The notes under the pieces: model-generated
The model's input: only the letters and a program-made list of their open reading frames with translations
What the model was told of the DNA's origin: nothing
Database searches by the model: none
Shown: positions 4,253 through 40,424 of the stretch, piece after piece
Layout of the letters: the number at the start of each line of letters is the position of its first letter
How positions within the stretch are numbered: position 1 is the stretch's first letter
DNA from: Octopus sinensis
Lineage: Eukaryota
Direction of reading: 5' to 3'
NCBI RefSeq assembly: GCF_006345805.1
Contig: NC_043004.1
Span: forward strand, 4,278,001 to 4,342,000
DNA length: 64,000 nt
Made by a program: the position numbers and the translations under genes

Positions 4253-7200
4253 CAGAGATCAAAGAGGGGTGCCGACAGAGATCAAAGGGGGTGCCGACAG
4301 AGATCAAAGAGGGGTGCCGACAGAGATCAAAGAGGGTGCCGACAGAGATCAAAGAAGGTGTCGACAGAGATCGAAGAGGGTGCCGACAGAGATCAAAGAG
4401 GGTGCCGACAGAGATCAAAGGGGTGCCGACAGAGATCAAAGAGGGGTGCCGACAGATATCAAAGGAGGTCCCGACAGAAATCAAAGAGGGTGCCGACAGA
4501 GATCAAAGGGGGTGTCGACAGAGATCAAAGAGGGGTGCCGACAGAGGTTAAAAAGGGTGCCGACAGAGGTTAAAAAGGGTGCCGACAGAGGTTAAAAAGG
4601 GTGCCGACAGAGATCAAAGTGAGTGCCGACAGAGATCAAAGAGGGGTGCTGACAAGGATCAAAGGGGGTGCCGACAGAGATCAAAGAGGGGTGTCGACAG
4701 TGATCAAAGAGGGGTGCCGACAGAGATAAAAGGGGGTGCCGACAGAGATCAAAGAGGGGTGCCGACAGCAATCAAAGAGGGTGCCGACAGAGATCAGAGG
4801 GGTGCCGACAGAGATCAAAGAGGGGTGCCGACAGGAATCAAAGAGGGTGCCGACAGAGATCAAAGAGGGGTGCCGACAGAGATCAAAGAGGGGTGCCGAC
4901 AGAGATCAAAGAGGGGTGCCGACAGAGATCAAAGAGGGTGCCGACAGAGATCAAAGACGGGTGCCGACAGATATCAAAGGGGGTGTACAGAGATCAAAGT
5001 GGTGCCGACAGAGATGAAAGAGGGGTACCGACAGAGATCAAAGAGGGGTGCCGACGGAGATCAAAGAGGGATGCCGACAGAGATCAAAGAGTGGTGCCGA
5101 CAGAGATCAAAGAGGGATGCACAGAGATCAAAGGGGGTGCCGACAGAGATCAAAGGGGGTGCCGACAGAGATCAAAGGGGTGCCGACAGAGATCAAAGAG
5201 GGGTGCCGACAGAGATCAAAGAGGGGTGCTGAAAGAGATCAAAGAGGGTGCCGAAAGAGATCAAAGAGGGTGCCGACAGAGATAAAAGAGGGTGCCGACA
5301 GAGATCAAAGAGGGGTACCTACAGAGATCAATGGGGGTGCCGACAGAAATCAAAGAGAGGTGCCGACAAAGATCAAAGAGGGGTACCGACAGAGATCAAA
5401 GGGGGTGCCGACAGAGACCAAAGAGAGTGCCGACAGAGATCAAACAGGGGTGCCGACAGAGATCAAAAAGGGTGCCGACAGAGATCAAAGGGGGTGCCGA
5501 CAGAGATCAAAGAGGGGTGCTGACAAAGATCAAAAGGGGTGCCGACAGAGATCAAAGAGGGGTGTCGACAGAGATCAAAGAGGGGTGCCGACAGAGATCA
5601 AAGGGTGTGCCGACAGAGATCAAAGAGGGGTGCCGACAGAGATCAAAGAGGGATGCCGACAGAGATCAAAGAGGGGTGCCGACAGAGATCAAAGAGGGTG
5701 CCGACAGAGATCAAAGAGGGGTGCCGACAGGAATCAAAGAGGGTGCCGACAGAGATCAAAGAGGGGTGCCGACAGAGATCAAAGAGGGGTGCCGACAGAG
5801 ATCAAAGAGGGGTGCCGACAGAGATCAAAGAGGGGTGCCGACAGAGATCAAAGGGGATGCACAGAGATCAAAGGGGTGCTGACAGAGATCAAAGGGGGTG
5901 CCGACAGATATCAAAGAGGGTGCCGACAGAGATCAAAGACGGGTGCCGACAAATATCAAAGGGGGGTGTACATAGATCAAAGGGGTGCCGACAGAGATCA
6001 AAGAGGGGTACCGACAGAGATCAAAGAGGGGTGCCGACAGAGATCAAAGAGGGATGCCGACAGAGATCAAAGAGGGGTGCACAGAGATCAAAGAGGGATG
6101 CACAGAGATCAAAGGTGGTGCCGACAGAGATCAAAGAGGGGTGCCGCCGACAGAGATCAAAGGGGGTGCCGACAGAGATCAAAGAGGGGTGCCGACAGAG
6201 ATCAAAGAGAGGTGCCGACAGAGATCAAAGAGGGTGCCGAAAGAGATCAAAGAGGGGTGCCGACAGAGATAAAAGAGGGTGCCGACAGAGATCAAAGAGG
6301 GGTACCTACAGAGATCAATGGGGTGCCGACAGAAATCAAAGAGAGGTGCCGACAAAGATCAAAGAGGGGTGCCGACAGAGATCAAAGGGGGTGCGGACAG
6401 AGACCAAAGAGAGTGCCGACAGAGATCAAAGAGGGTGCCGACAGAGATCAAAAGGGGTGCCGACAGAGATCAAAGGGGGTGCCGACAGAGATCAAAGAGG
6501 GGTGCTGACAAAGATCAAAAGGGGTGCCGACAGAGATCAAAGAGGGGTGTCGACAGAGATCAAAGAGGGGTGCCGACAGAGATCAAAGGGGTGCCGACAG
6601 AGATCAAAGAGGGATGCCGACAGAGATCAAAGAGGGTGCCGACAGAGATCAAAGAGGGGTACCGACAGAGATCAAAGAGTTGTATCGACAGAGATAAAAG
6701 AGGGTGCCGACAGAGATCAAAGAGGGGTACCGACAGAGATCAAGGGGGTGCCGACAGAAATCAAAGAGTGGTGCCGACAGAGACCAAAGAGGGGTGCCGA
6801 CAGAGATCAAAGGGGGTGTCGACAGAGACCAAAGAGGGTGCTGACAGAGATCCAAGAGGGGTACCGACAGAGATAAAAGAGGGTGCCGACAAAGATCAAA
6901 GAGGGGTACCGACAGAGATCAAAGGGGTGCCGACAGATGTCAAAGAGATAAAAGAGGGTGCCGACAGAGATCAAAGAGGGGTACCGACAGAAATCAAAAA
7001 GGGTGCCGACAGAGATCAAAGAGGGATGCCGACAGAGATCAAAGAGGGTGTCGACAGAGATCAATTGGGGTGCCGACAGAAATCAAAGAGAGGTGCCGAC
7101 AGAGAGCAAAGGGGTGCCGACAGAGATCAAAGGGGGTGCCGACAGAGATCAAAGAGGGGTGCTGATAGAGATCAAAGGGGGTGCCGCCAGAGATCAAAAA

Positions 7201-8830
7201 GGGTGCCGAAAGATATAAACGAGATCAAAGAGGGGTGCCGACAGAGATCAAAGAGGGATGCACAGAGATCAAAGGGAGTGCCGACAGAGATCAAAGGGGG
7301 TGCCGACAGATATCAAAGACGGGTATCTACAGAGATAAAAGAGGGTGCCGACAGAGATCAAAGAGGGGTACCGACAGAGATCAAAAAGGGTGCCGACAGA
7401 GATCAAAGAGGGATGCCGACAGAGATCAAAGAGGGTGCCGACAGAGATCAATTGGGGTGCCGACAGAAATCAAAGAGATGTGCCGACAGAGAGCAAAGGG
7501 GTGCCGACATAGACCAAAGAGGGTGCCGACAGAGATCAAAGAGGGGTGATGATAGAGATCAAAGGGGTGCCGCCAGAGATCAAAAGGGGTGCCGAAAGAT
7601 ATAAAAGAGATCAAAGAGGGGTGCCGACAGAGATCAAAGAGGGGTGCCGATAGAGATCAAAGGGGGTGCCGACAGAGATCAATTGGGGTGCCGACAGAAA
7701 TCAAAGAGAGGTGCCGACAGAGAGCAAAGGGGTGCCGACAGAGATCAAAGGGGATGCCGACAGAGACCAAAGAGGGTGCCGACAGAGATCAAAGAGGGGT
7801 TCCGACAGAGATCAAAGAGGGGTGCCGACAGAGATCAAAGAGGGGTGCCGACAGAGATCAAAGAGGGTGCCGACAGAGATCAAAGAGGGTGCCGACGGAG
7901 ATCAAAGAGGGATGCACAGATATCAAAGGGAGTGCCGACAGAGATCAAAGGGGTGCCGACAGAGATCAAAGAGGGGTGCCGAAAGAGATCAAAGAGGGGT
8001 GCCGATAGAGATCAAAGAAGGGTGCCGACAAGGATCAAAGAGGGTGCCGACAGAGATCAATGGGGTGCCGACAGAGATGAAAGGGGGTGCCAACAGAGAT
8101 CAAAGAGGGGTGCCGACAGAGATCAAAGGTGGTGCCGACAGAGATCAAAGAGGGGTACGACAGAGATCAAAGGGTGTGCCGACAGATACCAAAGAGGGGT
8201 ATAGACAGAGATCAAAAACGGGTACCGACAGAGATCAAAGAGGGATGCCGACAGAGATCAAAGAGGGGTGTCGACAGAGATCAAAGAGGGATGCACAGAG
8301 ATCAAAGGGGGTGCCAACAGAGATCAAAGGGGGTGCCGACAGAGATCAAAGAGGGGTGCCGAAAGAGATCAAAGAGGGTGCCGATAGAGATCAAAGAAGG
8401 GTGCCGACAAGGATCAAAGAGGGTGCCGACAGAGATCAATGGGGTGCCGACAGAGATCAAAGAGGGGTGCCGATAGAGATCAAAGAAGGGTGCCGACAGA
8501 GATCAATGGGGGTTCCGACAGAGATCAAAGAGGGGTGCCGACAGAGATCAAAGAGGTGTGCCGAGAGAGACCAAAGGGTTGCCGAAATAGATCAAAGAGG
8601 GTGCCGAGATCAAAGAGGGTGACAGAGATCAAAGGAGGTACGACAGAGATTAAAGGGGATGCCGACATAGATCAAAGAGGGGTGCCGACATAGATCAAAG
8701 AGGGGTGCCGACAGAGATCAAAGGGGGTGCCGACAGAGATCAAAGAGAGGTGTCGACAGATATCAAAAGGGGTGTCGACAGAGATCAAAGAGTGTGCCGA
8801 AAAAGATCAAAGAGGGTGCCGAAAGAGATC
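4253..8830. repeat. 4.6 kb minisatellite, consensus GACAGAGATCAAAGAGGGGTGCC (21-23 bp units, roughly 200 copies estimated from length)
   Basis: Continuous tandem array read directly. Unit length varies in the G run, and the + strand is strongly purine-rich. Confidence 0.98.
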
Positions 8831-12322: not shown

Positions 12323-13240
12323 TGTTGTGTCCACTGCTCTGATTGGTTGGCATTTGGCGCAGTTTGTCTTCCGACTTATTTCGCGCCAGTGTGTAGGCCA
12401 ACCAATCATGGCCTTTGGATAAGGTCTCGTGACACTGTTTTCCTGATCCCTCATTTGAGCCATCTAAACCCTATAAATAATCCAGCATTTCACTATTCCT
12501 GGTCTTTCGGCTTTAGACCTTCTAAGGTCTAGTCACTGACCACAGAGCTACTCAGCCATGTTCCAGTTTGAGCGACAGACGACCAGTCAGCCAGCCAGCC
12601 ATGCTACTGCTCCAGCCATGAAGATGCTATTATACACCAGTGACAGACAGGATGTTCTCCATCTCCGCCACCGTCATCACCATCGCCGACGACTTCATGT
12701 ACACAACATTCACACACGTTTAAACTCACGCTGTTTGTGAATATTTCACCGAGGTAAAACAGTTCCAGTCTACCCGAAAGAACTTTCTGTACCAAGAGAC
12801 TCGGCACAGCATAATAGCCACAACTTCTACACGTGTAGTAACCGGTCTCTGCCACGTGACCCCCCCCCCAACATTTTGTTATAGAACTCTTGCTATCATG
12901 TACCTCACTTATGAACTGGTAAACTAATTCCATCTTAACTCAATATGCTGAGACATTCATCTTATGCTCTGTATTTTGTTCTATACGCATACACCTCTGT
13001 CACATACACGAACTCACAGGTACAAACACTTATCGCATGCATCTAGACACAATACTGCTAGCACTCACAACGCACTATCTTTGTACACATTGTAAATAAA
13101 GTCTTCTCTCTCTCAGACAGTTGAACGGTTGTCGTCCATCATTTATTCCTTTTGGCACTGTATTTTATATTATGTATTTGGCTTCATAGTTAGTTAGGGG
13201 CGACCGTGCGGCGTTCAAAAGGAAATATTTGTCACCAACA
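12323..13240 (+). mobile_element. LTR-like element (probable solo LTR), copy 2
   Basis: TGTTG...CAACA inverted termini, CCAAT 12402-12406, TATAAA 12472-12477 and AATAAA 13095-13100. Homologous to 1748-2709. No clean target-site duplication was found. Confidence 0.6.
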
Positions 13241-13345
13241 CCCCACGTACGGTCGTATTCCCTACAAGAGAGAGAAAATTCTGTGCTACTTTTGCATACA
13301 GTCTAGTGCAGTATCCATAGTCTCCACTGTGAAATGACTTGATCT

Positions 13346-13503
13346 GGGTTAGGAATAGGGTTATGGTTTAAGGTCAGAGTAGGGATAGGGTTTAGAGTTA
13401 GCTATTAGGGCTTAGGGTTTAGGGTTAGTTAGGGGTTGAGTTTTGGGGTTATGGTTATTTTTTTAGGATTATGGTTAGGGTTAGATTTTATCGTTATGGT
13501 TAG
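13346..13503 (+). repeat. Degenerate telomere-like (TTAGGG-type) interstitial tract
   Basis: Repeated TTAGGG, GTTAGG and TTATGG variants. Confidence 0.75.
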
Positions 13504-17245: not shown

Positions 17246-19876
17246 TAGTTAGTTAAAGTTAATCCAAACATCAAAGCACAAAAAAAAACACAACAACGCG
17301 AGGACGTGGAACAAATATAGTATTATTGGATGCTCAGGAAAGAAGGAGGATTTAACATTTTGAGCTGAGCTCTTCGTCGGAAACATAGAAGGAAAGATCC
17401 AGAGAAAGGAAGACAGAGGGAAAAAAAAATCGCCAACGGTACACATGCGGTCACATTTTGAATCATATATATATATATGTATTTATACTTTTGTCCCCAT
17501 GGGTAATATGAGGAAATATGGCACATATACAATAATCTTAATTAAACTTTTATTCAAATCTCTCAAAATGATTGATAACACAAATACTAATTTTTAGAAA
17601 ATTATTTCATACTGTCTCTCTCAATCTTTCTATATAATGTACATCATGACCGGAGAATTCAACCAACAAACAGTTTCATTGGATAATATATATAATTTAG
17701 ACTTAGGAGAAGGGATAGAGCTTCCTATATCTTTTCTAGGCTTTACTCATCTGGATAGGAGCAAGTGCCAAGTGATATGTTTTGAAATCTTTGAAGGCCA
17801 ATGGTTCATGGAAAACATTAGGTTAGGGCTTAGGTGAAACACAATAAAGGGAAATACATGAGGATGCTATCATTTGACTGTGTGTTCACTGAGATATTAA
17901 TTGATGATATTGCAACCAGGTTTTGCCACTTTTTTGGGGGGTTTTCTGCTGCTCTCTGTGAGTCAGTGGAACTGAGGTATGATCACTCTTTGATGATGCA
18001 AGACCAGCTTTTCCCCACCTTCCATGGTTGTCTTTGCCTGACAGGAGCCTCTTGTGACATGGCTATACCATTTCAGTTTCCTTGTCTTCATAATTGTCAG
18101 CAGATCCTTGTGGTCAAATAGCCGGTGTTATTCTCATCCCCACATCATCATGTTCTTTGTACAAGCCATCTCATCTTCATTGTGCTTACCTTTTTTCTTT
18201 TCCAATTCTTTTAATGTCCAAGCATTGCGGCTGTATAGAAATATGGATATCACAAATGAGGATAAGATTAGACAGAACGGTTATGCAATATCAGAACCCA
18301 GTAGTATTCCTTGATAACTATGTATATTAAGCATGGTTGTGTGGTTTAGAAGCTCGTTTTACAACCCTGTAGTTTTGGATTCAGTTCCACTATGTGGAAA
18401 TTACCTTCTACTAGAATTCCTGACCAATGAATACCTTGTGAGTGAATGTGGTAGATAGAAACAGTGAGGAAGCCCATCATATATGTGTGCATGTATGTCT
18501 TCCCATTTATTCATTTATACCACCACTGCTTGACAACCAGTTTTGATCTGTTTACATCCCTGTAATATAGCAGTTCAGCAAAAGAGATTGATAGAATAAG
18601 TACCAAACTTGAAAATATATACTGGGGTCAATTTGTTTAACTAAACCCCTTAAAGTAAGTGTTCCAGCAATACTGCAGTTTAATGACTAAAATAAATAGA
18701 TAAAAGATATAAACAGCTTTGTCCAGCAAACCCTGTCTTAATTGATTTTAAGCTTCATTAAGTAACAATTTTTGGCTCTCACTATTACCAAAGGCATCTC
18801 CTGGTAAAAGTACAACCTTAACAAAGCTAAGATCTCATTCCAGCAACTACCCATGCCCTTCAAGATTAGAAGCTACTTCAGCTCCTAACATTCTGCAAAG
18901 CTCAAATGAGGCTCTTTTCTCACATTTGAGACAGTGCTGTTGCAATACACACAGATATACCTCTCGTTTTTAGTAAAAATTACTGAATGGTAGTATGAAT
19001 GGAATAAAGTGTTTTATCACAGTCTCCATTGCAATTAGTGACATTTAAAACGGAGTGTTCAGGGCCAGCTTTTTTTTTTCTTTTTTGCATTTAAATTACT
19101 CCTGCTTCTAGGATGATTCAAATTACATTCTATCCAGACATATGAAGTAGTTCTATAAATCCTAACAACTGGATACCTTTTATGAAGTCTACTCTATATT
19201 TGAGCCTGTACGTGGTCCTTAGAAATGCTAGAAATAGCAGTCAAATCTCCCACAAATTGAAAAGAGAACATGATGAGCAATGTTATCCAAGGTCTCAGCT
19301 GGAATGCTTCTGGTTATAGTATAACTGCTTTACAATGATCCATTCATCCTATATTTAAGGAATTTGATTATGCCATTGTCCAACGACAACAGTAACTATC
19401 AGGTGTTGCTGCTTAACTTCAAGTGAATGATCGAATGTATACCAGCTGTGACCATCCCATCATTATAGGGACAAATAGGATTACAACAGCTAATGTCAGG
19501 GGAATGATTTCATTGCAGGATGTGGGTCACATAAACTGTCATAAGTTTCTAAAACCCTAAATAGTGGTGAGGATCAAAGCCTCAAGTTCAAACAATATAG
19601 AGGTGCTCACCAAGGAAATCATGAAATTATAAAACATTCAGTTTTTTCTCAGCAAAGAACCCCTACAAACTTTTATGCATTTGTAAGTTGCCAGTAGTAC
19701 TTAACTGTTTAGCACTCAGATTATTGTCAAATGTAATGCTAATTTATTAATATTGTTTTGAATTAATCATGCATTATCTCATAGCTTTGAGATTTTGATG
19801 ATGCGATAGTTTGACTGGTTTAAAAGCTAAAAGGCTAATGAAGTTTCTGGATACAGAAACAAGTCTTAGATAACTA

Positions 19877-20226: not shown

Positions 20227-23200
20227 ATATTCTGTTATGCTTGATAGTAAGACAAATTAGTGATTGCAATATTTGTGACAAGTCTATTTAACTACGGACT
20301 GATTGAATAAGCCATAAGTCAAAATTTGCAATAAATTTTAGTTTCAATATTGAGTTCCTCATCAGTAAATTATAAAGTTGCTTTAAAATAACCTCAACGT
20401 AACATTTGTTATACTAAATTACGTCTATTCTTTCAGTGGTTTAATGATCATCTATTTAATGTCAGAGAATTCTGCAAATGTTAGCAGTTCACATTTTGAA
20501 TTAGGTGGCCATAGTCATCTTCCATCCGACAACTAGTCAGTATTACTGATCATTATTTGATTGATTTCTCTATGCTGCTTCCCATGGTGATTCTAATTTA
20601 GTCTAATCTCTCACCTATAGTTGTTTGGGTCATAGGAATAATGGAAATCCCACTACAACAATCAAGATAAGAATCATTAAATTTAAATCAATAATGCTGA
20701 TAAATAGCAATCTTTTATTTTTAACAATAAATGGAAAGTACTTTCCCATTTTTTCATGTTTCTAACCAAACAGCAATCATCAGATAGTACATTAACTGGG
20801 TCCCCCTACCACTGCAATAAAAATATACAATGTGTTACTACTACTACTACTACTACTGAGTTCTCTTTCACATACTATACAGAGACAAACATTCTTTCCT
20901 TCTAAATAAGCTTGGTATAGCAAAATAACTGTACGCTGTTCTTGAAGAGTTATCGAACTTGCTCAAAGCAAATGAAAAATAATAATCAGTAAATGCAATC
21001 TTCACTATAGAAAGAACTTTTTGTTTCGGTACAAGATCTTTTGTACAATATGGTGGATAAAGCAGTGACTTGCAGATATTTCATCAATCCCTTGTATCTT
21101 TGCGAGATGGTTCTGCACTTTGTAGCTGAACAACCTGCACAAACGATTTGTTTATAGTGAACAGCACACACCCTCCATCAAATTGACATTACCTGAACAG
21201 GTACATGGTGTATCATGTCAGGTGTCAAGGTAACCAGAACGTGAGATGAGGTTTTTGGTGCCTGGCCCAAGAGCAATCATGAGTGCCACATCCTAACTTC
21301 TAAGTCACGAGTTGTTTCAACCCCCAATAACAAAACCAAACTATACCAACCAGTCTCTTGACTGTGGAGTTTCCATACAAATACCCATTACTTTGATTAA
21401 ATCAATAACAAAAAAGATACCTAAATTCAAATTCTCTGTGGTCACCTGATTAAAAAGTTCACTAAGTAGATATGTGGGGTTCCAGATTTGAACCACCACT
21501 ATGCTGTATCTTGGGCAAGTGTCTTCACCAATAATCACAAGTGATTATATCTTGCAAATGGAATTTACAGCCATGCTAGCATGGAAGGTGGAAGTTAAAT
21601 GATGATAATAAAAAAATCATTGTCTGTCAGTGTTTACACTGTCCCAATTCTTCACCAAGACAAAACCCCACCAAAAACCAAACAACTCAATATTGTTTAA
21701 GACATATTCTTTTATGTCCCACAAAAGAACACATCTCTGAGATTCATGAGCTGATATGATAAAAATCAGACCCTTGAAAGTGATGCAAAAACATGGCAAC
21801 ACACTACTACCATGTCTGAAACAAGTGAAAGGATTTAACATTTTTTAGCATCAATCAAACAAGAGATCTAAACAGTTTCTACATGGTTAAATGACTGGAG
21901 AGAAACAGCTACCAAATTTTTGTCTTGCAAGGGAGAAAACATTGGGCAATGTAACAAGATAACTAATACCCGCTGGATTTCTATTAATCACAGATCTGTC
22001 CTAGGGCTAAAATCAACAACAGAAATTATGATCATTGCAATTTTGATTCAACATTAAAAACAAAAATGACAAAGAATTATCTATGACAGCAGAAATTTTT
22101 AGGATTTGTCATTTTATTCAAATTATGTACACAATAATTTGGTTTTTGTAATACTTGCCAACACCCACATACCAAATTTTCTTAAAGGGGAAAAAAAACC
22201 CATCCCCAGACAAAGACAAAAATTATACCTGTAAGATTACTGTGGTTTGAGGTAACTGTGAGCTGGTTGCCAGCATCTAGAATTGATTAGTAATGAAAAA
22301 CCAGCTAAAGCAAGTCAGATGTGTTAAAAGATAGAAGAGTTGATTTTATTGATGCATAAATATACAGTCACCGCAAGCTTTCTAGCAAGGAAAACGTGAG
22401 TGAAATTAATTTGGAGGAAAGAGAAGACGTGAATTTTATATCTATATATATTCATTTATATAAAACTGTAATTGAGTTAGATCTCCTTGCAGTCTAACAT
22501 CCATTGTTATTAGTTCTGATGGGAAAAATAAGTTAGAAAGAAAGAAAAATTTAGTTTGCTTTATATTGTATGTATTAAGTCATTTGGGTAATGTTTACAT
22601 TTGATGATGAGGGGGATGGAGGTAGCAATGATGAAAGGGCCAGTGAAAAGAGAGAAAAAAGACAAAAAAAAAAAACCCCACCCCTTTATCTAAAACAGAA
22701 ACCAGATGAAGTCAGTCAGTGAAATAAAATTTAAATTAAAAATAAGTTTTCTATTACTTAGGGAGAAATTGTATAAAGTAAATGTTGCATATATTCACAG
22801 TATGCAGAGTCAAGATTAGGTGACTAACAAACACTATGGAAGGGTTAAGATTTGCTCAGCTCTTGATGGACCCAGCAGTTGTTTTGTACAAACTGTACAG
22901 ATCACCAATGACTCAGTGATGGTGGATAATAATGCTGATTGTAGCTATTAAAATATGTGTATATCACAGACACACAGCAATGTAATATTCGTCATTTCCA
23001 TTCTCTGTCTGATTTCTTCATTTTCAATGCTAATAATTGTCTTAAGCATTAAGGAGAGATGCAACAAATATCAAAACAATTTAATACAGTTTATGATTTC
23101 AGTCAGAAAACCCAGAGAAACATGAGAAAACAGTCTCCAGAATAATTACTATAGGTATCAGAATGGTATTTGCTTTTCTTTCCACTTCCAAAGTAGTTGT

Positions 23201-23457: not shown

Positions 23458-23566
23458 CTACCTTTTGCTATTACTGTGTCCCATTCCCCTAATGGGCATT
23501 TTGAAATTGGCAGCAGCCTGATACTGGAGTTGATATGCTAATGGGTGAATCTTGAAACCATATAAT
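23458..23566 (-). CDS. CSNK2B: Casein kinase II beta, terminal coding exon: (R)[35 protein letters not shown]
   Basis: Acceptor TTTTCAG, phase 2. Matches the CK2beta C-terminal RLYGFKIH motif. Stop TAG at 23460-23458. Confidence 0.93.
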
Positions 23567-25348: not shown

Positions 25349-25538
25349 CTTGGAATAAATTGGTTTGCAGGACGCTTAGGTCTGTATTCAGGATGGACCA
25401 TGAACAACATGTGTGGGAAACCAGTGCCGAAATATGCTCCATCCGTGTGGTGATGACGAGAAGACTTAGGTGTGTAAACATCTTGGCATTTTGGACAGTA
25501 CAGCTTTACCATGGCTTCACCAGGTACATCAGTGAGAC
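25349..25538 (-). CDS. CSNK2B: CK2beta coding exon 5 (190 nt): [64 protein letters not shown]
   Basis: AG/GT boundaries. Contains the second CxxC zinc-finger pair (CPKC) and is near-identical to vertebrate CK2beta as recalled. Confidence 0.98.
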
Positions 25539-26644: not shown

Positions 26645-26720
26645 CAATAGGTAGCATGGGTTGGTTTTCACAATAAACCCTAGGACAGTAACCAAAGTCA
26701 CCTTGCTGCCATTTTTCAAT
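26645..26720 (-). CDS. CSNK2B: CK2beta coding exon 4 (76 nt): [25 protein letters not shown](G)
   Basis: TTTTGACAG acceptor and GTAAGT donor. Contains the first zinc-finger pair CPRVYC. Confidence 0.98.
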
Positions 26721-28610: not shown

Positions 28611-28785
28611 TTAAAGAAACTGTTAATATTAACATTCCATTCCCAACCCTCTTTAAACGATCTCAAAGGGAATTAAATGTGTGAATACGACTACACACTA
28701 GTTGGAAGCCTTAAGCTAAATCTGAAAATGTATTTTAAATAGAACAGCAATGAAAATAAAAAAGCTGGTTAACGGCTAAGCTTAC

Positions 28786-28901
28786 CATTTGAGCTATGCC
28801 CCTATTTGTCATTATGTAACGTGCATGGATCAAACCATACAGCATCTCAGCAGCTTGCTCAATCAAATCACTTTGGTTTGGATTATCTTCAAGTTCATCA
28901 T
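28786..28901 (-). CDS. CSNK2B: CK2beta coding exon 3B (canonical, 116 nt): (D)[38 protein letters not shown]
   Basis: TTTATACAG acceptor (phase 1) and GTAAGC donor (phase 0). Near-identical to human CK2beta residues about 59-97 as recalled. Confidence 0.97.
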
Positions 28902-30404
28902 CTGTATAAAGATAAATCATTTACAGCCATCAACTCTCGCCCAACCAATTCCGATCAACAAACCCTGCAGAAACAATTACTGCGCACGTGTGTGTGTGTG
29001 TGTCTGCGTATGTGTAATAAAAAATAAAACAGCAAAAAAAGAAAAAGGAATTTTGGAAACGGATGCAAACTTGCAAAATTCATATTTAAAAATAAATAAA
29101 AAAATAAACACCACTACAAAAATTATAACCAGAAATTGCGGGAGGAGAAAATGCACAACTCCTTTAATCATATCTAAATTCTCTAGATAAAAAAAGCCAT
29201 GCCTCTAATGGCAATAAAATATATTGAATTGCAGTATATGACATTCAAGATTCTCAGGACTAAGTAATTGTCATGATTTTTCTAATCAGTTGATTAGTTA
29301 TTAGTTAGTTCATGTATTATCCATACTTCTTATATCTAGTTACTAAATCTACATCATCATAATCATTTTAACACCCTCCCTCTCTTTTCCATGCGTGCAT
29401 GGAGTTTGAGGCAGGTGTTCTATAGCAGGACGGTCTGTTTGCCACTAATTCTCACCCATTTCCAAGCAAGACATGTTTTCACAGAATGACACTGCTTACA
29501 TGATGGTGACATTCATTTACAACCACCACACAATGTCAAGACAAGGACACATGTAATCACATTTCGAATCAATCATTCACTGTGGTCCTGTACTTTTGGT
29601 TTTCGTTTGCTTTCTTCCACAGTACGTAAATTTCCTAACTAAAGTTGGTCTGTTATCAAGATTGAAAAAAACCTTCAGTTGTTGCATCTTCAGTGCCTAC
29701 ATACAACAACACATATACATATATATACAATGGGTTTCCTTCAGTTTCCATCAACCAAATCCACTGATAAGGCTTCGGTTGGCTCAGAACACTTGCCTAA
29801 AGTGCCATGCAATGGGACTGAATTCATAACCATGTGGTTGGGAAGCAAGTATTTAAAACTCAAATGGCTTTAAGATCTTGCAATTGGTCAGTTAATCAAA
29901 CATCTTCAATTTTCTCAGACTATTAGAATCCTTTTGCTAAAGAAAATACATGTGTCATAGAAAATGCCACTTCCTTAAAATATGTATTTATCTGCTACAT
30001 AATTCTGCAATATCCTAACTGCCAACTGTTGAAGCACCTATCACCTGCATCAATTTCATACATCTTGATTAATGGTTCTAACTAATCATAAGCTAGAGGC
30101 AAACCCTTCATCTCAGATGCAATGCAATAAATTATATAAATATGAGACACTAAAACATATTCTATTTCAGTCTAAAGACAGCAGTAAAATTTAGCTGTCC
30201 TAAAATATTATCTTCAGATTTTCCCCCCTCTCCTTCCATGAAACAATTATTAAAGTCAGACAGAAAAACAAACACACTTGAAGGCAGTTCAAATTGAGAA
30301 TGTCATATTATGCAAGGTGTGAGACAAGAACAACAAATTTCTTTTGAAAACAAAATGAACATTCCATCAGACAGGGTCATGGCAGGAAGCAGACAAATTC
30401 TTAC

Positions 30405-30517
30405 CATAGTACTGAGACCAGCATTTGTTAGGATATATCTAGCATGAATCAGTCCATAAAGCATGTCAGCAGCCTGCTCCAGCTGGTCTTTATTAACGCA
30501 GTCATCCCCATCATCGT
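30405..30517 (-). CDS. CSNK2B: CK2beta alternative coding exon 3A (duplicated, 113 nt): (D)[37 protein letters not shown]
   Basis: TTTTCTTGTGTTAG acceptor (phase 1) and ATG|GTAAGA donor (phase 0), the same phases as exon 3B. The frame is open, and the [21 protein letters not shown] core is retained with many synonymous changes. Confidence 0.88.
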
Positions 30518-32848
30518 CTAACACAAGAAAACAGATCTTCACAGTGAAGAAGCTTGGACAGATACAATGTGATAATAGAGTTTACACAAGCTATTAACAG
30601 CCAGCAGTCACACTTAAATTAGAACATATACAATCACAATACAATTTCAGTAAAAATTAGTTCTGAAAACTATCACATTTTCATTTGCTTTGCAATTAAG
30701 AACATGACAGTCATAGAAAACTTACCTATTTCTTTTGGTTAGTACATTCGTGTTAGTGAAGGAGTATACACTGCCTAAATTTGTGAAGGTAGCAACTACT
30801 CTATTCTCTCTCTTACTTTTTCCTGAATGTCTTTTTTTTTTCTAAAACAAGGAAGCTCATGTGCCCTGATTAGAAGCGAGTTCTGATGTTATGAACAGGA
30901 CTCTTGGTCCTTTTTAACATTAAGATGACTGTATGGAGGTGCAAATAAATTCTAAACTATGGACAAAGCACGTTTGTCCATCCATATATGTATACTGCGA
31001 CACTAAAACGAAGTTACCTCCCTTCTATACTATAACTTCACAAACACATGGAAATATATTTAAAACATCTCAACTATATTTTCATGTTCTTTCCCGAATG
31101 CAAAGCGACATATTTCTCATGAAAATGGACTGCATTTGAAACTAATGTAAAAGCTTTGTGCATTATCACATCCAAGATCTGCTGTGCTGAAGTGAATTAG
31201 GAATGCAACAATCTCTGCTAATTTCTTATGCAAGCTCAAAGTGCAAATATTACAACAGTTTATCTGTGAGAGAAATGCTGACTGATGTCACAAGAAAGCC
31301 ATCACAACAAAGGAATACAATGTGCAAACCACTGTAAACTTATCTCCTAAACATAAAATATTTAATGATTGACATTTACAGAGACATCAAATTTATTAGA
31401 TTAATACTAGTAAGGAACTGTTTTGATCTCACCAAAAGCTACTGGTTTTACTAATAACCAGTCAACTGTAATGATATATTTTTATACAACAGGAATAAAT
31501 GCTGGCATGGCTATATGGTTAAGAAGTAAACTACATTTTACTGTTCATTCCCATTGTGTGGGTACTGTCAGTGTTTTCTACAGACATGGGTTGATCAAGC
31601 ATTGTGAGTGAAGTTGGTAGATGGAAACAGTGAGAAACCCATTCCATATACATGTGTACTTGTGAGTGTGTCTTCCCCTTGTCTTAACAGGTATACACTA
31701 ATTGAAAAAAAAGTCATCATTCATATAGCATCATTTGTTTACAATATATCCAAGTAAACATGCCAAGCCATTGAGTTGTTCAATGTTGAAGTAAGATGGG
31801 GAAAATGTTACTTTCCTCAAAAACAGAAGAGTGCTGGTAATAGGAAGAGCATTTGGCCACAGAAAATCTACCTCAAACAAGTTACATCTGCCCCATGCAA
31901 GTATAGAAAAGTGGAGGTTAACACGATATTGAAAATTGCATCTCTCCTGCAGCTGATGCTTTTGATATTTTAAATCTAATTAGCAACTAATTTCTCTGAT
32001 TTAGAGAAACCTCATTATACTTGCTTAAAGTTCAAACTGAATAACCAGATGAATTTTTATCTCCAGTTATAATATTTCTATATTTCTGTTTTTTTTTGCA
32101 ATGTCTCATGGTCAAAAGTATTCCATGATATTGAATGGTCTTAATGCAATAAGCTGCTGTATATACTAGTCACCACATTCAGAGTCTGCAGTTAAAGAGT
32201 TCAGATCAAACTTTGATCAGATTGATCTGATACCTATCCTCAGCTGTAGGCTTAGCTGTGTCACAACAAAGTAAAAGGGTTTTGATACAAAACACAACAA
32301 AAATAAGTAACATTTTAAAAGATTTTTGTTAAAGCAGAGCAAGGTAGCACCCATGAAATTTTTGCAGGGTTTCCAAAACTGGCAAAGAAAGCACCCACGT
32401 GTTATCTTCAGATTGGAGACCTTAACTGAATGTTTACAACATAGTAGATGAAAAGGTAATAAAGGGTGAAACGGAGATGAATTAGTTCTATTGAATTTCA
32501 CTGACAAGGCTTGGAACGACTCAAGGCTATGAAAGAAGCCACTTGTCCAATGTACTGTGCAGTGGGATTGAACTGGGAACTTCTTAACCATAAAGTCATT
32601 CATATCCCCAAGTGCACCTAGTTGAATATCTTGATCATTTTGTCATATTCATCATCATCATTTAGTGTCTGCTTCCATGCTGGCATGGACTGGACAGTTC
32701 GACTTAAACTAGTAAGCCGGAGAGCTGCACTAAGTTCCAGTCTGGTTGGATGCCCTTCCTGACACCAACCATTCTAAGAGTATAAAGGATGTGTCTCACA
32801 AAAAAAAAAAATTTTAAGAATCAAAACAAAAGCCAATAGATTGAGTAC

Positions 32849-32951
32849 CTGGCTCAAGGTCTAATATCATATCCAGAGCCTGCCTATAATGAGGGACTTG
32901 TTCATTGAGACCTGTTAAGTTGAATTTGTCTTGAATATAATCTTCATCAAC
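32849..32951 (-). CDS. CSNK2B: CK2beta coding exon 2 (103 nt): [34 protein letters not shown]
   Basis: TTATTGCAG acceptor and GT donor. The translation matches human CK2beta as recalled. Confidence 0.98.
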
Positions 32952-38790: not shown

Positions 38791-38862
38791 TTCGCAAAAG
38801 AACTCATTTCCTCGCAATCCACAAAACCAGGAAATCCAAGAGACTTCCTCTGAACTACTCAT
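38791..38862 (-). CDS. CSNK2B: CK2beta first coding exon (72 nt CDS): [24 protein letters not shown]. The exon starts at 38870 with 8 nt of 5'UTR.
   Basis: Long polypyrimidine tract with TTCAG acceptor, ATG at 38862 and GTAAGT donor. Includes the MSSSEE autophosphorylation N-terminus. Full CDS is 221 aa with 3B or 220 aa with 3A. Confidence 0.98.
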
Positions 38863-40424
38863 ATCAGATCCTGAAGTGAAAAAACGAAAAAAGAGAAAAC
38901 TTTAGATAAGCAATTCATGTGAAACTCGTTTAAAATATGTAATTAAATTATTTACCGAATATTTGCTTCCACATGAGAGCAATGATGGTTTTCTCAAAAT
39001 GATCGATATAAGTTTCAACAAATAATCGGTTTGTACATAAAACAGTTTATGTAACAGGAGCAAAATGATACACTCGATTATATGATGGAGGTAACAAATC
39101 TATTTTTACAACACTGTCCTAAAAATGTTTTTTGTTAAAGCAATTCAAAGCAAATTTTGTCATCACCATGTGTGCATGATTCGATACTTATGTTTAACAG
39201 CAAAAAAAAGATCAACCTAAAACCTCTGCTTACACATCGTATTCAATAGCAGGAAGATATTAAACAATACACTTTATACGTCATAATAAACATATCATCA
39301 GATTAAAAAAGAATATTTTCACAATACACTGATCAGATCACTTGAAATTAATTACACATGAAGAAAAAAAAAAATTCTGAAATTCAACAGACGTTAATGT
39401 TTTACTCCCAGAATTCAGTTAGAATTAAGAGAAATGTTATGAAAACAACGTTACAAGCAACAGACATCAATTTCTTCCTACTGGCAATTTAAGATATAAA
39501 GTGAAATATTGGACAGAATAGTGATTCTATATTCTCTGAAATGGGTGTAACGTCATCTTATCACTTCCATCTTATTTTTAATCTTAACTAGCAATAGCTC
39601 ACATTTCAACTAAGATTGGTTAAACGAGATAAGTTCATAAACCCTGATAAAAACATAACCCTGCTATATACAATGAATCCACAAGTAGAAGACATTTCAA
39701 TGCCCAATTCCCTACTCGAGGGTTGTTTATACTGAATTGTTTCAGTAAGCAGAGACGCAATTTTAAATGGATAAATACGCAATAATTATAGCAAGCATTT
39801 ACAAAGATAAATACTAATTGGTAACACAGAAATATAACAAATTAGTGCGACCGGCACTGCAGTGGCTGAAATAATATTCGTCACGATGGAAATATAATAA
39901 TAATAATAATGATGATAATAATAATAATAATGTTTGTTAGATTGACTTAACAGTACATTTAATGATTTTTTGATCGTCTCGTTAAAGGCAAACCCAGAAA
40001 ATACAAAGATATTTAACAAAAGTCGAGTTAAAAACCAAGAACAGTGCCCGCCAACAACGAGCAATCCTCGCGAAACAGTGATTCATCTCTACGAAGAGAA
40101 GCTCAAAAAGGACAATCGTAGACAGAAGTCTTGTGAGATTATAATGGCACTTACAGAAAGTCATTTGCAAACATTATTATGCGATAAAAAATAAACTTCT
40201 AAAATCACTTGACTTGAAACAAATCACGTGTAAAGTGCGTAGATAATTTCTGAATGGTAAGAATTCAACAGATTTTGGCAAAATTCTCTGAAGAGCATCC
40301 GGCCATCTTAAACGATGTCGTTTGCTGTGAAAGCAGAGGGGAGGCTGAGAATTAGAGACAAATACTACATTTCATGAATAGATTAACACAATTTTAAGAT
40401 TGGTAAATAATTATACATGCTTAC

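What the first reader, a model, noticed from the sequence alone, without database searches (positions are those of the whole stretch)
28786..30517. Tandemly duplicated, mutually exclusive exon pair in CK2beta (3A at 30517-30405, 3B at 28901-28786)
Seen in sequence: two homologous exons with identical intron phases (1 in, 0 out) and canonical splice sites, 1.5 kb apart, between single-copy flanking exons. Either one alone gives a full CK2beta (220 or 221 aa). Including both shifts the frame and stops after 12 codons (ATG ATG AAC...ATT TGA), and skipping both also shifts the frame. In the shared 21-codon core, 18 residues are identical and 10 of those use different codons, which indicates an old duplication under purifying selection rather than a decaying copy. 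Established: CK2beta is normally an extremely conserved subunit. Inference: this lineage makes two CK2 regulatory subunits from one gene by mutually exclusive splicing. I am not aware of this being described for CK2beta, but I could not search.
Basis: partly seen in the sequence, partly recalled or inferred. Interest (0 to 1): 0.88.

Follow-up and report, generated by a model that had tools for sequence, protein, structure and literature searches.

The report
Alternative exon pair in octopus CK2beta
The octopus gene for the regulatory subunit of protein kinase CK2 carries two old, intact copies of one exon that are used one at a time, giving two versions of a normally invariant protein, and scallops have the same unannotated arrangement.

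Summary
The window is Octopus sinensis chromosome CM016866.1. Its CK2beta gene lies on the minus strand and has two homologous exons: 3A (30517-30405, 113 nt) and 3B (28901-28786, 116 nt). They share intron phases and have AG/GT splice sites. Either exon alone gives a 220 or 221 aa protein; both together, or neither, break the frame.

RefSeq already models a 3A-only isoform on this locus (XP_036361111.1, isoform X2). Exon 3A is intact in O. vulgaris, O. bimaculoides and Argonauta hians. Both exons, unlike the constitutive ones, have 50-70 nt of conserved flanking intron.

New here: four scallop genomes carry an unannotated divergent exon-3 copy in the same place. It keeps the frame despite indels and is under clear purifying selection (dN 0.014-0.067 against dS 0.28-0.55). 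Lottia, an oyster and a unionid mussel lack it. One ancient origin or several independent ones cannot be decided.

The swapped segment (human residues 59-97) holds most of the acidic regulatory loop and helix alphaD.

I found no paper describing this. It is a new member of a known kind of splicing. I saw no RNA-seq junction reads.

The parts
38953..38974 (-). Alternative 5' exon with an upstream ATG (MWKQIFG...), spliced to just upstream of the main ATG. It gives the 9-residue N-terminal extension of RefSeq isoforms X1 and X2. The low-coordinate boundary is approximate.
   Evidence: tblastn of the MWKQIFGSD... N-terminus; P0002 and P0126 sequences.
38791..38862 (-). Coding exon 1 from the main ATG ([24 protein letters not shown]), donor GAA|gtaagt, phase 0.
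32849..32951 (-). Exon 2 (103 nt, VDEDY...LDLEP + G). Ends in phase 1. Single copy.
30518..30572 (-). Conserved intron stretch upstream of exon 3A (polypyrimidine and acceptor region), alignable between Octopus and Argonauta.
   Evidence: blastn block 30572-30347 at 87% identity; alignment A1.
30405..30517 (-). Exon 3A (113 nt), encoding (D)[37 protein letters not shown]. This is the alternative copy, used in RefSeq isoform X2.
30347..30404 (-). Conserved intron stretch downstream of exon 3A (gtaagaatttg.ctgcttcc...atggaatgtt).
28902..28950 (-). Conserved intron stretch upstream of exon 3B.
   Evidence: blastn block 28950-28718; alignment A2.
28786..28901 (-). Exon 3B (116 nt), encoding (D)[38 protein letters not shown]. 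This is the canonical copy; its peptide is identical in octopus, scallops and Sinanodonta.
28718..28785 (-). Conserved intron stretch downstream of exon 3B.
26645..26720 (-). Exon 4 (76 nt, [25 protein letters not shown] + G). Starts in phase 0. Single copy.
25349..25538 (-). Exon 5 (190 nt): second half of the zinc finger and the core.
23458..23566 (-). Exon 6 (109 nt including the TAG stop): C-terminal segment that binds CK2alpha.

Best explanation
Exons 3A and 3B are a tandemly duplicated, mutually exclusive pair in the single octopus CK2beta gene. One pre-mRNA gives two full-length regulatory subunits. They differ only in residues 59-97 (human numbering).

What is swapped (shown). The segment covers most of the acidic loop (Asp55-Asp70), helix alphaD with its acidic-groove residue 77, and the linker 91-96. 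Residues unchanged in both versions are the autophosphorylation site, the destruction box, Tyr80, Arg86, Met97, the four zinc cysteines, the dimer interface and the CK2alpha-binding tail.

How exclusivity works (inferred). Both exons have ordinary U2-type sites. The intron between them (1503 nt) is too long for steric exclusion. What can be read from the sequence is frame policing. Both exon lengths equal 2 mod 3, so including both exons gives a stop 12 codons into 3B, and skipping both shifts the frame. Such mRNAs would be unproductive and probably removed by nonsense-mediated decay. The choice between the two exons is probably regulated. Only these two exons carry 50-70 nt of conserved intron on each side, and their synonymous sites are almost frozen between Octopus and Argonauta.

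What the swap does (inferred, not tested). The acidic loop is the autoinhibitory, polyamine- and polybasic-peptide-binding and oligomerisation element of CK2beta. The two isoforms should therefore give CK2 holoenzymes that differ in basal activity, polyamine response, oligomerisation or partner docking. Assembly with CK2alpha should not differ.

Origin. The duplication is much older than the Octopus-Argonauta split. The same architecture exists in scallops.
For: - Anatomy and frames.
- Transcript-level support: RefSeq isoform X2 (XP_036361111.1) equals the 3A-only product at 100% identity, and it is annotated on the very assembly the window comes from.
- Conservation in octopods: 3A is identical in O. 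vulgaris and O. bimaculoides. In Argonauta it is 106/113 nt identical, with AG, GT and the open frame kept.
- Age and long-term purifying selection: 3A versus 3B gives pS 0.79-0.93 (saturated) against pN 0.22-0.25.
- Signature of a regulated alternative exon: the Octopus-Argonauta blastn blocks are 228 and 238 nt around 3A and 3B. Around the constitutive exons they extend only 5-21 nt beyond the exon.
- Frozen synonymous sites: 0 of 24 differ in 3A and 3 of 22 in 3B, against 48 of 108 in the constitutive exons (P=8e-7 and 0.002).
- Independent support from scallops: Mizuhopecten, Pecten, Ylistrum and a fourth scallop assembly have an upstream divergent exon-3 copy of 137, 131, 131 and 140 nt. 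All lengths equal 2 mod 3, all have AG...GT, and all give a stop when joined to the canonical exon. Core dN is 0.014-0.067 against dS 0.28-0.55.
- Function of the swapped segment: PMC9608649, with residue mapping to 1JWH chain C.
Against: - I saw no junction reads or cDNA. The only transcript evidence is one automatic Gnomon model.
- Every annotated protein retrieved for O. bimaculoides, O. vulgaris and Argonauta uses 3B.
- Neither the 3A-centred fragment search nor the isoform-A profile search found any other predicted or assembled protein with a 3A-type exon, in octopus or scallop. These searches have limited reach, because isoforms collapse into 90% identity clusters.
- Between Octopus and Argonauta all 7 substitutions in 3A are non-synonymous and none is synonymous. 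That is not the classical protein-level purifying pattern. It fits nucleotide-level constraint plus a fast-evolving acidic loop.
- I found no conserved competing RNA structure, and local folding is not unusually stable (z = 0.47 and -0.12).
- The functional difference between the isoforms is untested.
Confidence: 0.8

Rival explanations
1. Exon 3A is mainly a poison exon. It is included together with the constitutive exon 3B. That puts a stop 12 codons into 3B and sends the mRNA to nonsense-mediated decay, which tunes CK2beta dosage. The 3A-only protein would be a minor by-product.
For: - 3A+3B gives a premature stop, and so do all four scallop pairs.
- All annotated proteins retrieved from the other octopod genomes use 3B only.
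- In octopods the synonymous sites of 3A are frozen and all substitutions are non-synonymous. That looks like RNA-level rather than protein-level constraint.
Against: - A poison exon does not need to keep a CK2beta-like peptide. Yet 24 of 39 residues, 18 of 21 in the core, are kept although synonymous sites are saturated.
- Tyr80, Arg86 and Met97 are kept in every 3A copy.
- In scallops dN/dS is about 0.03-0.13, and all length changes are multiples of three.
- The RefSeq model that contains 3A lacks 3B.
Confidence: 0.1
2. The conserved 3A block in octopods is a nucleotide-level element, such as an intronic splicing regulator or the arm of an RNA-editing structure. Its open frame would be a relic of the duplication, and isoform X2 an annotation artefact.
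For: There are no synonymous differences in 24 sites and 7 non-synonymous ones between Octopus and Argonauta. Overall divergence is 6% against about 44% at neutral sites. Flanking intron is conserved.
Against: - With so few changes the open frame could persist by inertia in octopods. But the deep 3A versus 3B comparison shows protein-level selection since the duplication.
- Scallops show textbook coding constraint on the equivalent exon.
- Both splice sites are kept in every species.
- No Rfam family matches and local folding is not unusually stable.
Confidence: 0.06
3. Exon 3A is a decaying, unused duplicate (a pseudo-exon).
For: All annotated proteins retrieved from the other three octopod genomes lack it.
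Against: - At the neutral rate seen between Octopus and Argonauta (pS 0.44), a free-running copy would differ at about 40% of sites and would have lost its frame or splice sites. It differs at 6% and keeps both.
- Synonymous sites are saturated against 3B, yet the core peptide is retained.
Confidence: 0.02

Closest known systems
Tandem-duplicated, mutually exclusive exon pairs in animals (for example ATE1 7a/7b, sodium-channel exon 5a/5b, OGDH 4a/4b; PMC7797038, PMC12772994, PMC7969005, PMC9741552, PMC8373072)
   Same: - Two adjacent homologous exons of nearly equal length and identical phase.
- One or the other is spliced in, giving proteins that differ only in a homologous segment.
- The duplication is old, both copies are under selection, and the flanking introns are conserved.
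- Double inclusion or double skipping breaks the frame.
   Different: - The host gene is CK2beta, for which I found no report of such a pair.
- The specific exclusivity mechanisms known for those genes were not found here. The intron is too long for steric hindrance. A distant branch point was not tested. No conserved competing RNA structure was established.
Drosophila CK2beta isoform and paralogue diversity (DmCK2beta types VIIa-d and VII-VI, CK2beta', SSL, Stellate; PMC5374408)
   Same: One animal lineage makes several non-identical CK2 regulatory subunits. Differences in the acidic micro-domain among the fly paralogues are proposed to matter for regulation.
   Different: The fly CK2beta splice isoforms differ only in the C-terminal tail. 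Variation in the acidic region comes from separate genes. In octopus the acidic loop and helix alphaD are swapped inside a single gene, and the tail is constant.
Poison (NMD-switch) cassette exons
   Same: Including 3A together with 3B creates a premature stop, so unproductive splicing can occur as a side product.
   Different: 3A alone keeps the frame and encodes a conserved CK2beta segment. Coding constraint is shown in scallops and in the deep 3A versus 3B comparison.

Membership tests
CK2 regulatory subunit (CK2beta, Pfam PF01214) | CK_II_beta domain over the whole protein and close identity to solved CK2beta structures | tested here: met
   PF01214 is precomputed for P0002. phmmer against PDB 1JWH chain C gives E=4e-135 over residues 1-212.
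CK2 regulatory subunit (CK2beta, Pfam PF01214) | Four zinc-binding cysteines (109, 114, 137, 140), the MSSSEE autophosphorylation site, and the C-terminal CK2alpha-binding segment | tested here: met
   Both isoforms contain MSSSEE, CPRVYC...CPKC and RLYGFKIH. All of these lie outside the swapped exon.
CK2 regulatory subunit (CK2beta, Pfam PF01214) | Acidic loop 55-70 and helix alphaD | tested here: met
   3A keeps an acidic stretch (DLEPDDDGDD...D) and the core [10 protein letters not shown]. The AlphaFold model is poor overall (pLDDT 52.6), but it predicts a helix at P0002 residues 77-95, with pLDDT 68-85 in that region.
Mutually exclusive exons from tandem exon duplication | Adjacent homologous exons with the same phases and similar length, between single-copy exons | tested here: met
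   113 and 116 nt, phase 1 in and 0 out, 70/114 nt and 24/39 aa identical. There are only two copies in the window.
Mutually exclusive exons from tandem exon duplication | Each exon alone gives an intact product; both or neither do not | tested here: met
   (220 aa, 221 aa, premature stop, frameshift). The same holds for the scallop pairs.
Mutually exclusive exons from tandem exon duplication | Transcripts exist with one exon or the other | tested here: inconclusive
   RefSeq models X2 (3A only) and X1/X3 (3B only) exist on this locus. No junction reads, cDNA or peptides could be examined, and no other database protein carries 3A.
Mutually exclusive exons from tandem exon duplication | Both copies conserved in related species | tested here: met
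   O. vulgaris, O. bimaculoides and Argonauta hians. An analogous pair exists in four scallops.
Mutually exclusive exons from tandem exon duplication | A known exclusivity mechanism: steric hindrance or U2/U12 incompatibility | tested here: not met
   The intron between the exons is 1503 nt. Both donors are GTAAG and both acceptors YAG, which is U2 type.
Mutually exclusive exons from tandem exon duplication | A known exclusivity mechanism: competing RNA structures (docking and selector sites) | tested here: inconclusive
   No complementary pair lay in intron blocks conserved between Octopus and Argonauta. Two divergent species are too few for a covariation test.
Poison (NMD-switch) exon | Inclusion by itself introduces a premature stop, and the peptide is under no coding constraint | tested here: not met
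   3A alone keeps the frame. Coding constraint is shown.

The most novel reading that the evidence does not exclude
The pair is not an octopus peculiarity. It would be one ancient molluscan invention, predating the split of cephalopods and bivalves more than 500 million years ago. It would be retained in octopods and scallops and lost in limpets, oysters and unionid mussels.

On this reading, an otherwise almost invariant kinase regulator has had a switchable autoinhibitory acidic loop all that time. In octopods the switch region is additionally frozen at synonymous sites. That would point to an RNA-level control layer, such as splicing enhancers, long-range structure or A-to-I editing, on top of the protein-level difference.
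Probability: 0.25. Interest if true: 0.7.

Novelty: new member of a known kind. Interest (0 to 1): 0.55.

Why it matters
CK2beta is one of the most conserved regulatory proteins in animals. The canonical exon-3 peptide is identical in octopus, scallops and a unionid mussel, and the 28-residue core compared differs from human at one position. CK2 is usually treated as a constitutively active kinase with one beta subunit per animal genome.

A natural, selected swap confined to the acidic loop, helix alphaD and the following linker is an evolutionary experiment on exactly the element thought to restrain CK2, namely autoinhibition, polyamine response and oligomerisation. Comparing the two isoforms in vitro would test that model directly.

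The scallop exons show that current mollusc annotations miss a conserved coding exon in a housekeeping gene. The same exon has been duplicated and kept either once very early or several times. Either answer says something about which part of CK2beta is free to vary.

Tried and rejected
1. Direct transcript evidence. The spliced 220 aa isoform could not be looked up, and the 229 aa RefSeq isoform is not on record as a gene product because only the longest product is kept. A 3A-centred 84 aa query returned only short fragments, all canonical and none identifiably octopod, so that negative result says little.
2. A profile of five isoform-A proteins found no further 3A-type protein anywhere. Isoforms collapse into 90% identity clusters, so this is weak negative evidence.
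3. Competing RNA structure. RNAduplex between the flanks gave no specific conserved stem. The inverted repeats found are either SINE-like and absent from the Argonauta alignment, or short and likely chance. Local folding of both exon blocks is no more stable than shuffled sequence.
4. Single versus multiple origin. A neighbour-joining tree of the 28-residue core gives 57/500 bootstrap support for a clade of all 3A copies. Six of the seven core sites changed in octopus 3A are also changed in scallop 3A (hypergeometric P=0.005). But these are the sites that vary across animal CK2beta generally, so the overlap does not prove common descent.
5. Structure prediction of isoform X2 gave a poor model (pLDDT 52.6), so I made no fold comparison.
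6. Squid, cuttlefish and nautilus genomes could not be reached with the available collections.
7. The Nucella lapillus locus could not be fetched.
8. An exon-4-like tblastn hit at 13343-13290 lies in degenerate CCCTAA-type repeats and is chance.
9. No Ly6-like gene was found downstream in the window.
10. Rfam found nothing in the window.

Full report
**What the window is.** The window is 100% identical over 16.5 kb to Octopus sinensis assembly GCA_006345805.1, chromosome record CM016866.1. The CK2beta (CSNK2B) gene lies on the minus strand. tblastn with human CK2beta, followed by reading the splice sites, gives these coding exons:

| Exon | Window coordinates | Length |
|---|---|---|
| 1 | 38862-38791 | 72 nt |
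| 2 | 32951-32849 | 103 nt |
| 3A | 30517-30405 | 113 nt |
| 3B | 28901-28786 | 116 nt |
| 4 | 26720-26645 | 76 nt |
| 5 | 25538-25349 | 190 nt |
| 6 | 23566-23458 | 109 nt |

An upstream 5' exon near 38974 supplies an alternative start, MWKQIFG.

**Check of the observation.**
- Both exons have AG acceptors and GTAAG donors, enter in phase 1 and leave in phase 0.
- 3A alone gives 220 aa and 3B alone gives 221 aa. Both together read [12 protein letters not shown]-stop. Neither shifts the frame.
- In codons 73-93, 18 of 21 residues are identical and 10 of these use different codons.
- There are only two exon-3 copies in the window.

**Is 3A used?** The protein database holds 'casein kinase II subunit beta isoform X2 [Octopus sinensis]' (XP_036361111.1, 229 aa). 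Apart from the alternative N-terminus it is 100% identical to the 3A-only product. Isoforms X1 and X3 carry 3B. So the public automatic annotation of this very locus already contains the 3A isoform.
- All annotated proteins retrieved for O. bimaculoides, O. vulgaris and Argonauta use 3B.
- I found no other predicted or assembled protein with a 3A-type exon.
- I could not see reads, so expression rests on one gene model. If real, the isoform is likely minor or tissue-restricted.

**Conservation in octopods.** I fetched the orthologous loci.
- Exon 3A is identical in O. vulgaris.
- In O. bimaculoides it is identical, including 40 nt of flank on each side.
- In Argonauta hians it is 106/113 nt identical, with AG, GT and the frame intact.
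- Between Octopus and Argonauta the constitutive exons differ at 48 of 108 synonymous sites (pS 0.44) and have dN 0.009. A free-running copy would therefore be unrecognisable.
- Only 3A and 3B sit in extended conserved blocks (228 and 238 nt, that is 50-70 nt of intron on each side). The blocks around constitutive exons barely exceed the exon. This is the usual mark of regulated alternative exons (my knowledge).

**An unexplained feature.** Synonymous sites in the pair are almost frozen between Octopus and Argonauta.
- 0 of 24 differ in 3A (P=8e-7) and 3 of 22 in 3B (P=0.002). Combined, P=2e-8.
- All 7 substitutions in 3A change the amino acid. Five fall in codons 62-67 of the acidic loop.
- Given only 7 changes, the lack of third-position changes is marginal on its own (P=0.06). 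The contrast with the rest of the gene (51 synonymous, 4 non-synonymous) is strong (Fisher P=7e-7).
- Local RNA folding is not unusual.
- Candidate explanations, none tested, are dense exonic splicing signals, long-range RNA pairing, or constraints linked to cephalopod A-to-I editing (context: PMC8382921, PMC5850729).
- Scallops do not show this freeze.

**Age.** Between 3A and 3B synonymous sites are saturated (pS 0.79-0.93), while pN is 0.22-0.25. The duplication is therefore far older than the Octopus-Argonauta split, and the protein was under purifying selection for most of that time.

**Beyond cephalopods.** All four scallop loci have a second, divergent exon-3 copy 0.7-2.4 kb upstream of the canonical one. 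The loci are Mizuhopecten yessoensis, Pecten maximus, Ylistrum balloti and assembly GCA_041381155.1. An example peptide is [44 protein letters not shown].
- It is not in the annotated proteins.
- Lengths are 137, 131, 131 and 140 nt. All equal 2 mod 3 despite indels in the acidic run, and all have AG...GT. Joining the copy to the canonical exon gives an early stop.
- Among scallops the core has dN 0.014-0.067 against dS 0.28-0.55. The canonical exon has dN 0 and similar dS. Constitutive exons have pS 0.39-0.55. This is plain coding constraint.
- Lottia gigantea, Crassostrea virginica and Sinanodonta woodiana have only the canonical exon.
- A Nucella lapillus gene model contains an extra upstream partial copy ([25 protein letters not shown]) that resembles the canonical exon. 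I could not fetch that locus.
- Whether the octopus and scallop copies descend from one duplication is unresolved. The core tree gives 11% support for a 3A clade. The shared changed sites are the generally variable ones.

**What is swapped.** Mapping to human CK2beta shows that the exon encodes residues 59-97.
- According to PMC9608649, the acidic loop (Asp55-Asp70) acts in down-regulation, as a pseudosubstrate, in oligomerisation and in binding polyamines and polybasic peptides. Glu77 in helix alphaD belongs to the acidic groove. Tyr80, Arg86 and Met97 are disease-linked.
- Octopus 3A keeps the acidic character (DDDGDD...D, one residue shorter) and changes Glu77 to Asp. It keeps Tyr80, Arg86 and Met97, and rewrites 92-96 from RGIAQ to AGLST.
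- Scallop 3A lengthens the acidic run, changes Glu77 to Gly and rewrites 91-96 to SQGMTI.
- The zinc finger, the dimer interface and the CK2alpha-binding tail are untouched.
- The inference is that the isoforms form the same holoenzyme but differ in autoinhibition, polyamine response, oligomerisation or docking.

**Mechanism of exclusivity.** Steric hindrance and U2/U12 incompatibility are excluded (1503 nt intron, U2-type sites). No conserved competing structure was found. What the sequence shows is frame incompatibility, so decay of wrongly spliced mRNAs is the most likely enforcement. That is an inference.

**Comparison with what is known.** The arrangement is a standard tandem-duplicated, mutually exclusive pair (PMC9741552, PMC8373072). 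For CK2beta, isoform diversity has been described in Drosophila. There the splice forms differ only in the C-terminal tail, and acidic-region variation comes from separate genes. A 2016 review states that such transcript diversity had not been reported in other animals (PMC5374408). Five literature searches found nothing on a CK2beta exon pair.

**Verdict.** This is a real feature. It is already present in one automatic annotation but undescribed in the literature I could search. It is a new member of a known kind, and it extends to scallops.

Noticed in passing
L004 5716-5852; L005 4697-4836; L006 2011-2141; L009 2881-3011: Four scallop genomes carry an unannotated, conserved, divergent copy of CK2beta exon 3 upstream of the canonical exon. 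It has a much longer acidic run and is under coding constraint.
   Followed up: yes
window 30405-30517 and 28786-28901 compared with L002 6961-7073 and 8693-8808: Synonymous sites of both alternative exons are almost frozen between Octopus and Argonauta (0/24 and 3/22, against 48/108 in constitutive exons). All 7 changes in 3A are non-synonymous, and 3 of them are A/G differences. The cause is unknown.
   Followed up: partly
window 29709-29775 and 31597-31663: A 67 nt inverted repeat pair (76% complementary) brackets exon 3A, with one arm in each flanking intron. From memory its sequence resembles the common octopus SINE; I did not test this. It is not in the blocks alignable with Argonauta. 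Pairing in the pre-mRNA would loop out 3A.
   Followed up: partly
window 4253-8830: A 4.6 kb minisatellite of about 204 copies of a 22-23 nt purine-rich unit (CAGAGATCAAAGAGGGGTGCCGA). It explains the GC and skew anomaly at 4-8 kb.
   Followed up: partly
P0004 (Nucella lapillus CK2beta model, 256 aa): The gene model reads through an extra upstream partial exon-3 copy ([25 protein letters not shown]) before the canonical exon. This suggests a third, younger-looking duplication of the same exon in a gastropod. The locus could not be fetched.
   Followed up: partly
P0265 / L008 (Crassostrea virginica) and P0119 (Magallana gigas K1PN44): Oyster models fuse CK2beta residues 1-186 to a Ly6/QVR-type three-finger domain encoded by the downstream gene (also modelled alone as P0266). 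This recalls the mammalian CSNK2B-LY6G5B read-through chimera (PMC3626593). No Ly6-like sequence was found downstream in the octopus window.
   Followed up: partly
window 23458-23462, 22243-22314, 18137-18247: The O. vulgaris model CAI9726953.1 (277 aa) carries a 43-residue C-terminal extension beyond the usual ...HSNSKR end. tblastn places the extension on two downstream segments. Reading, an AG|GTAGGC donor overlaps the normal TAG stop. This would be a possible alternative C-terminus, as in Drosophila CK2beta.
   Followed up: no
window 13230-13420: Degenerate CCCTAA-type (telomere-like) repeats on the minus strand. A weak exon-4-like tblastn hit here (GDYGYCTRLY) is chance.
   Followed up: partly
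window 38953-38974: An alternative 5' exon with an upstream ATG adds MWKQIFGSD to isoforms X1 and X2. O. bimaculoides has MWRQIFGSD.
   Followed up: partly
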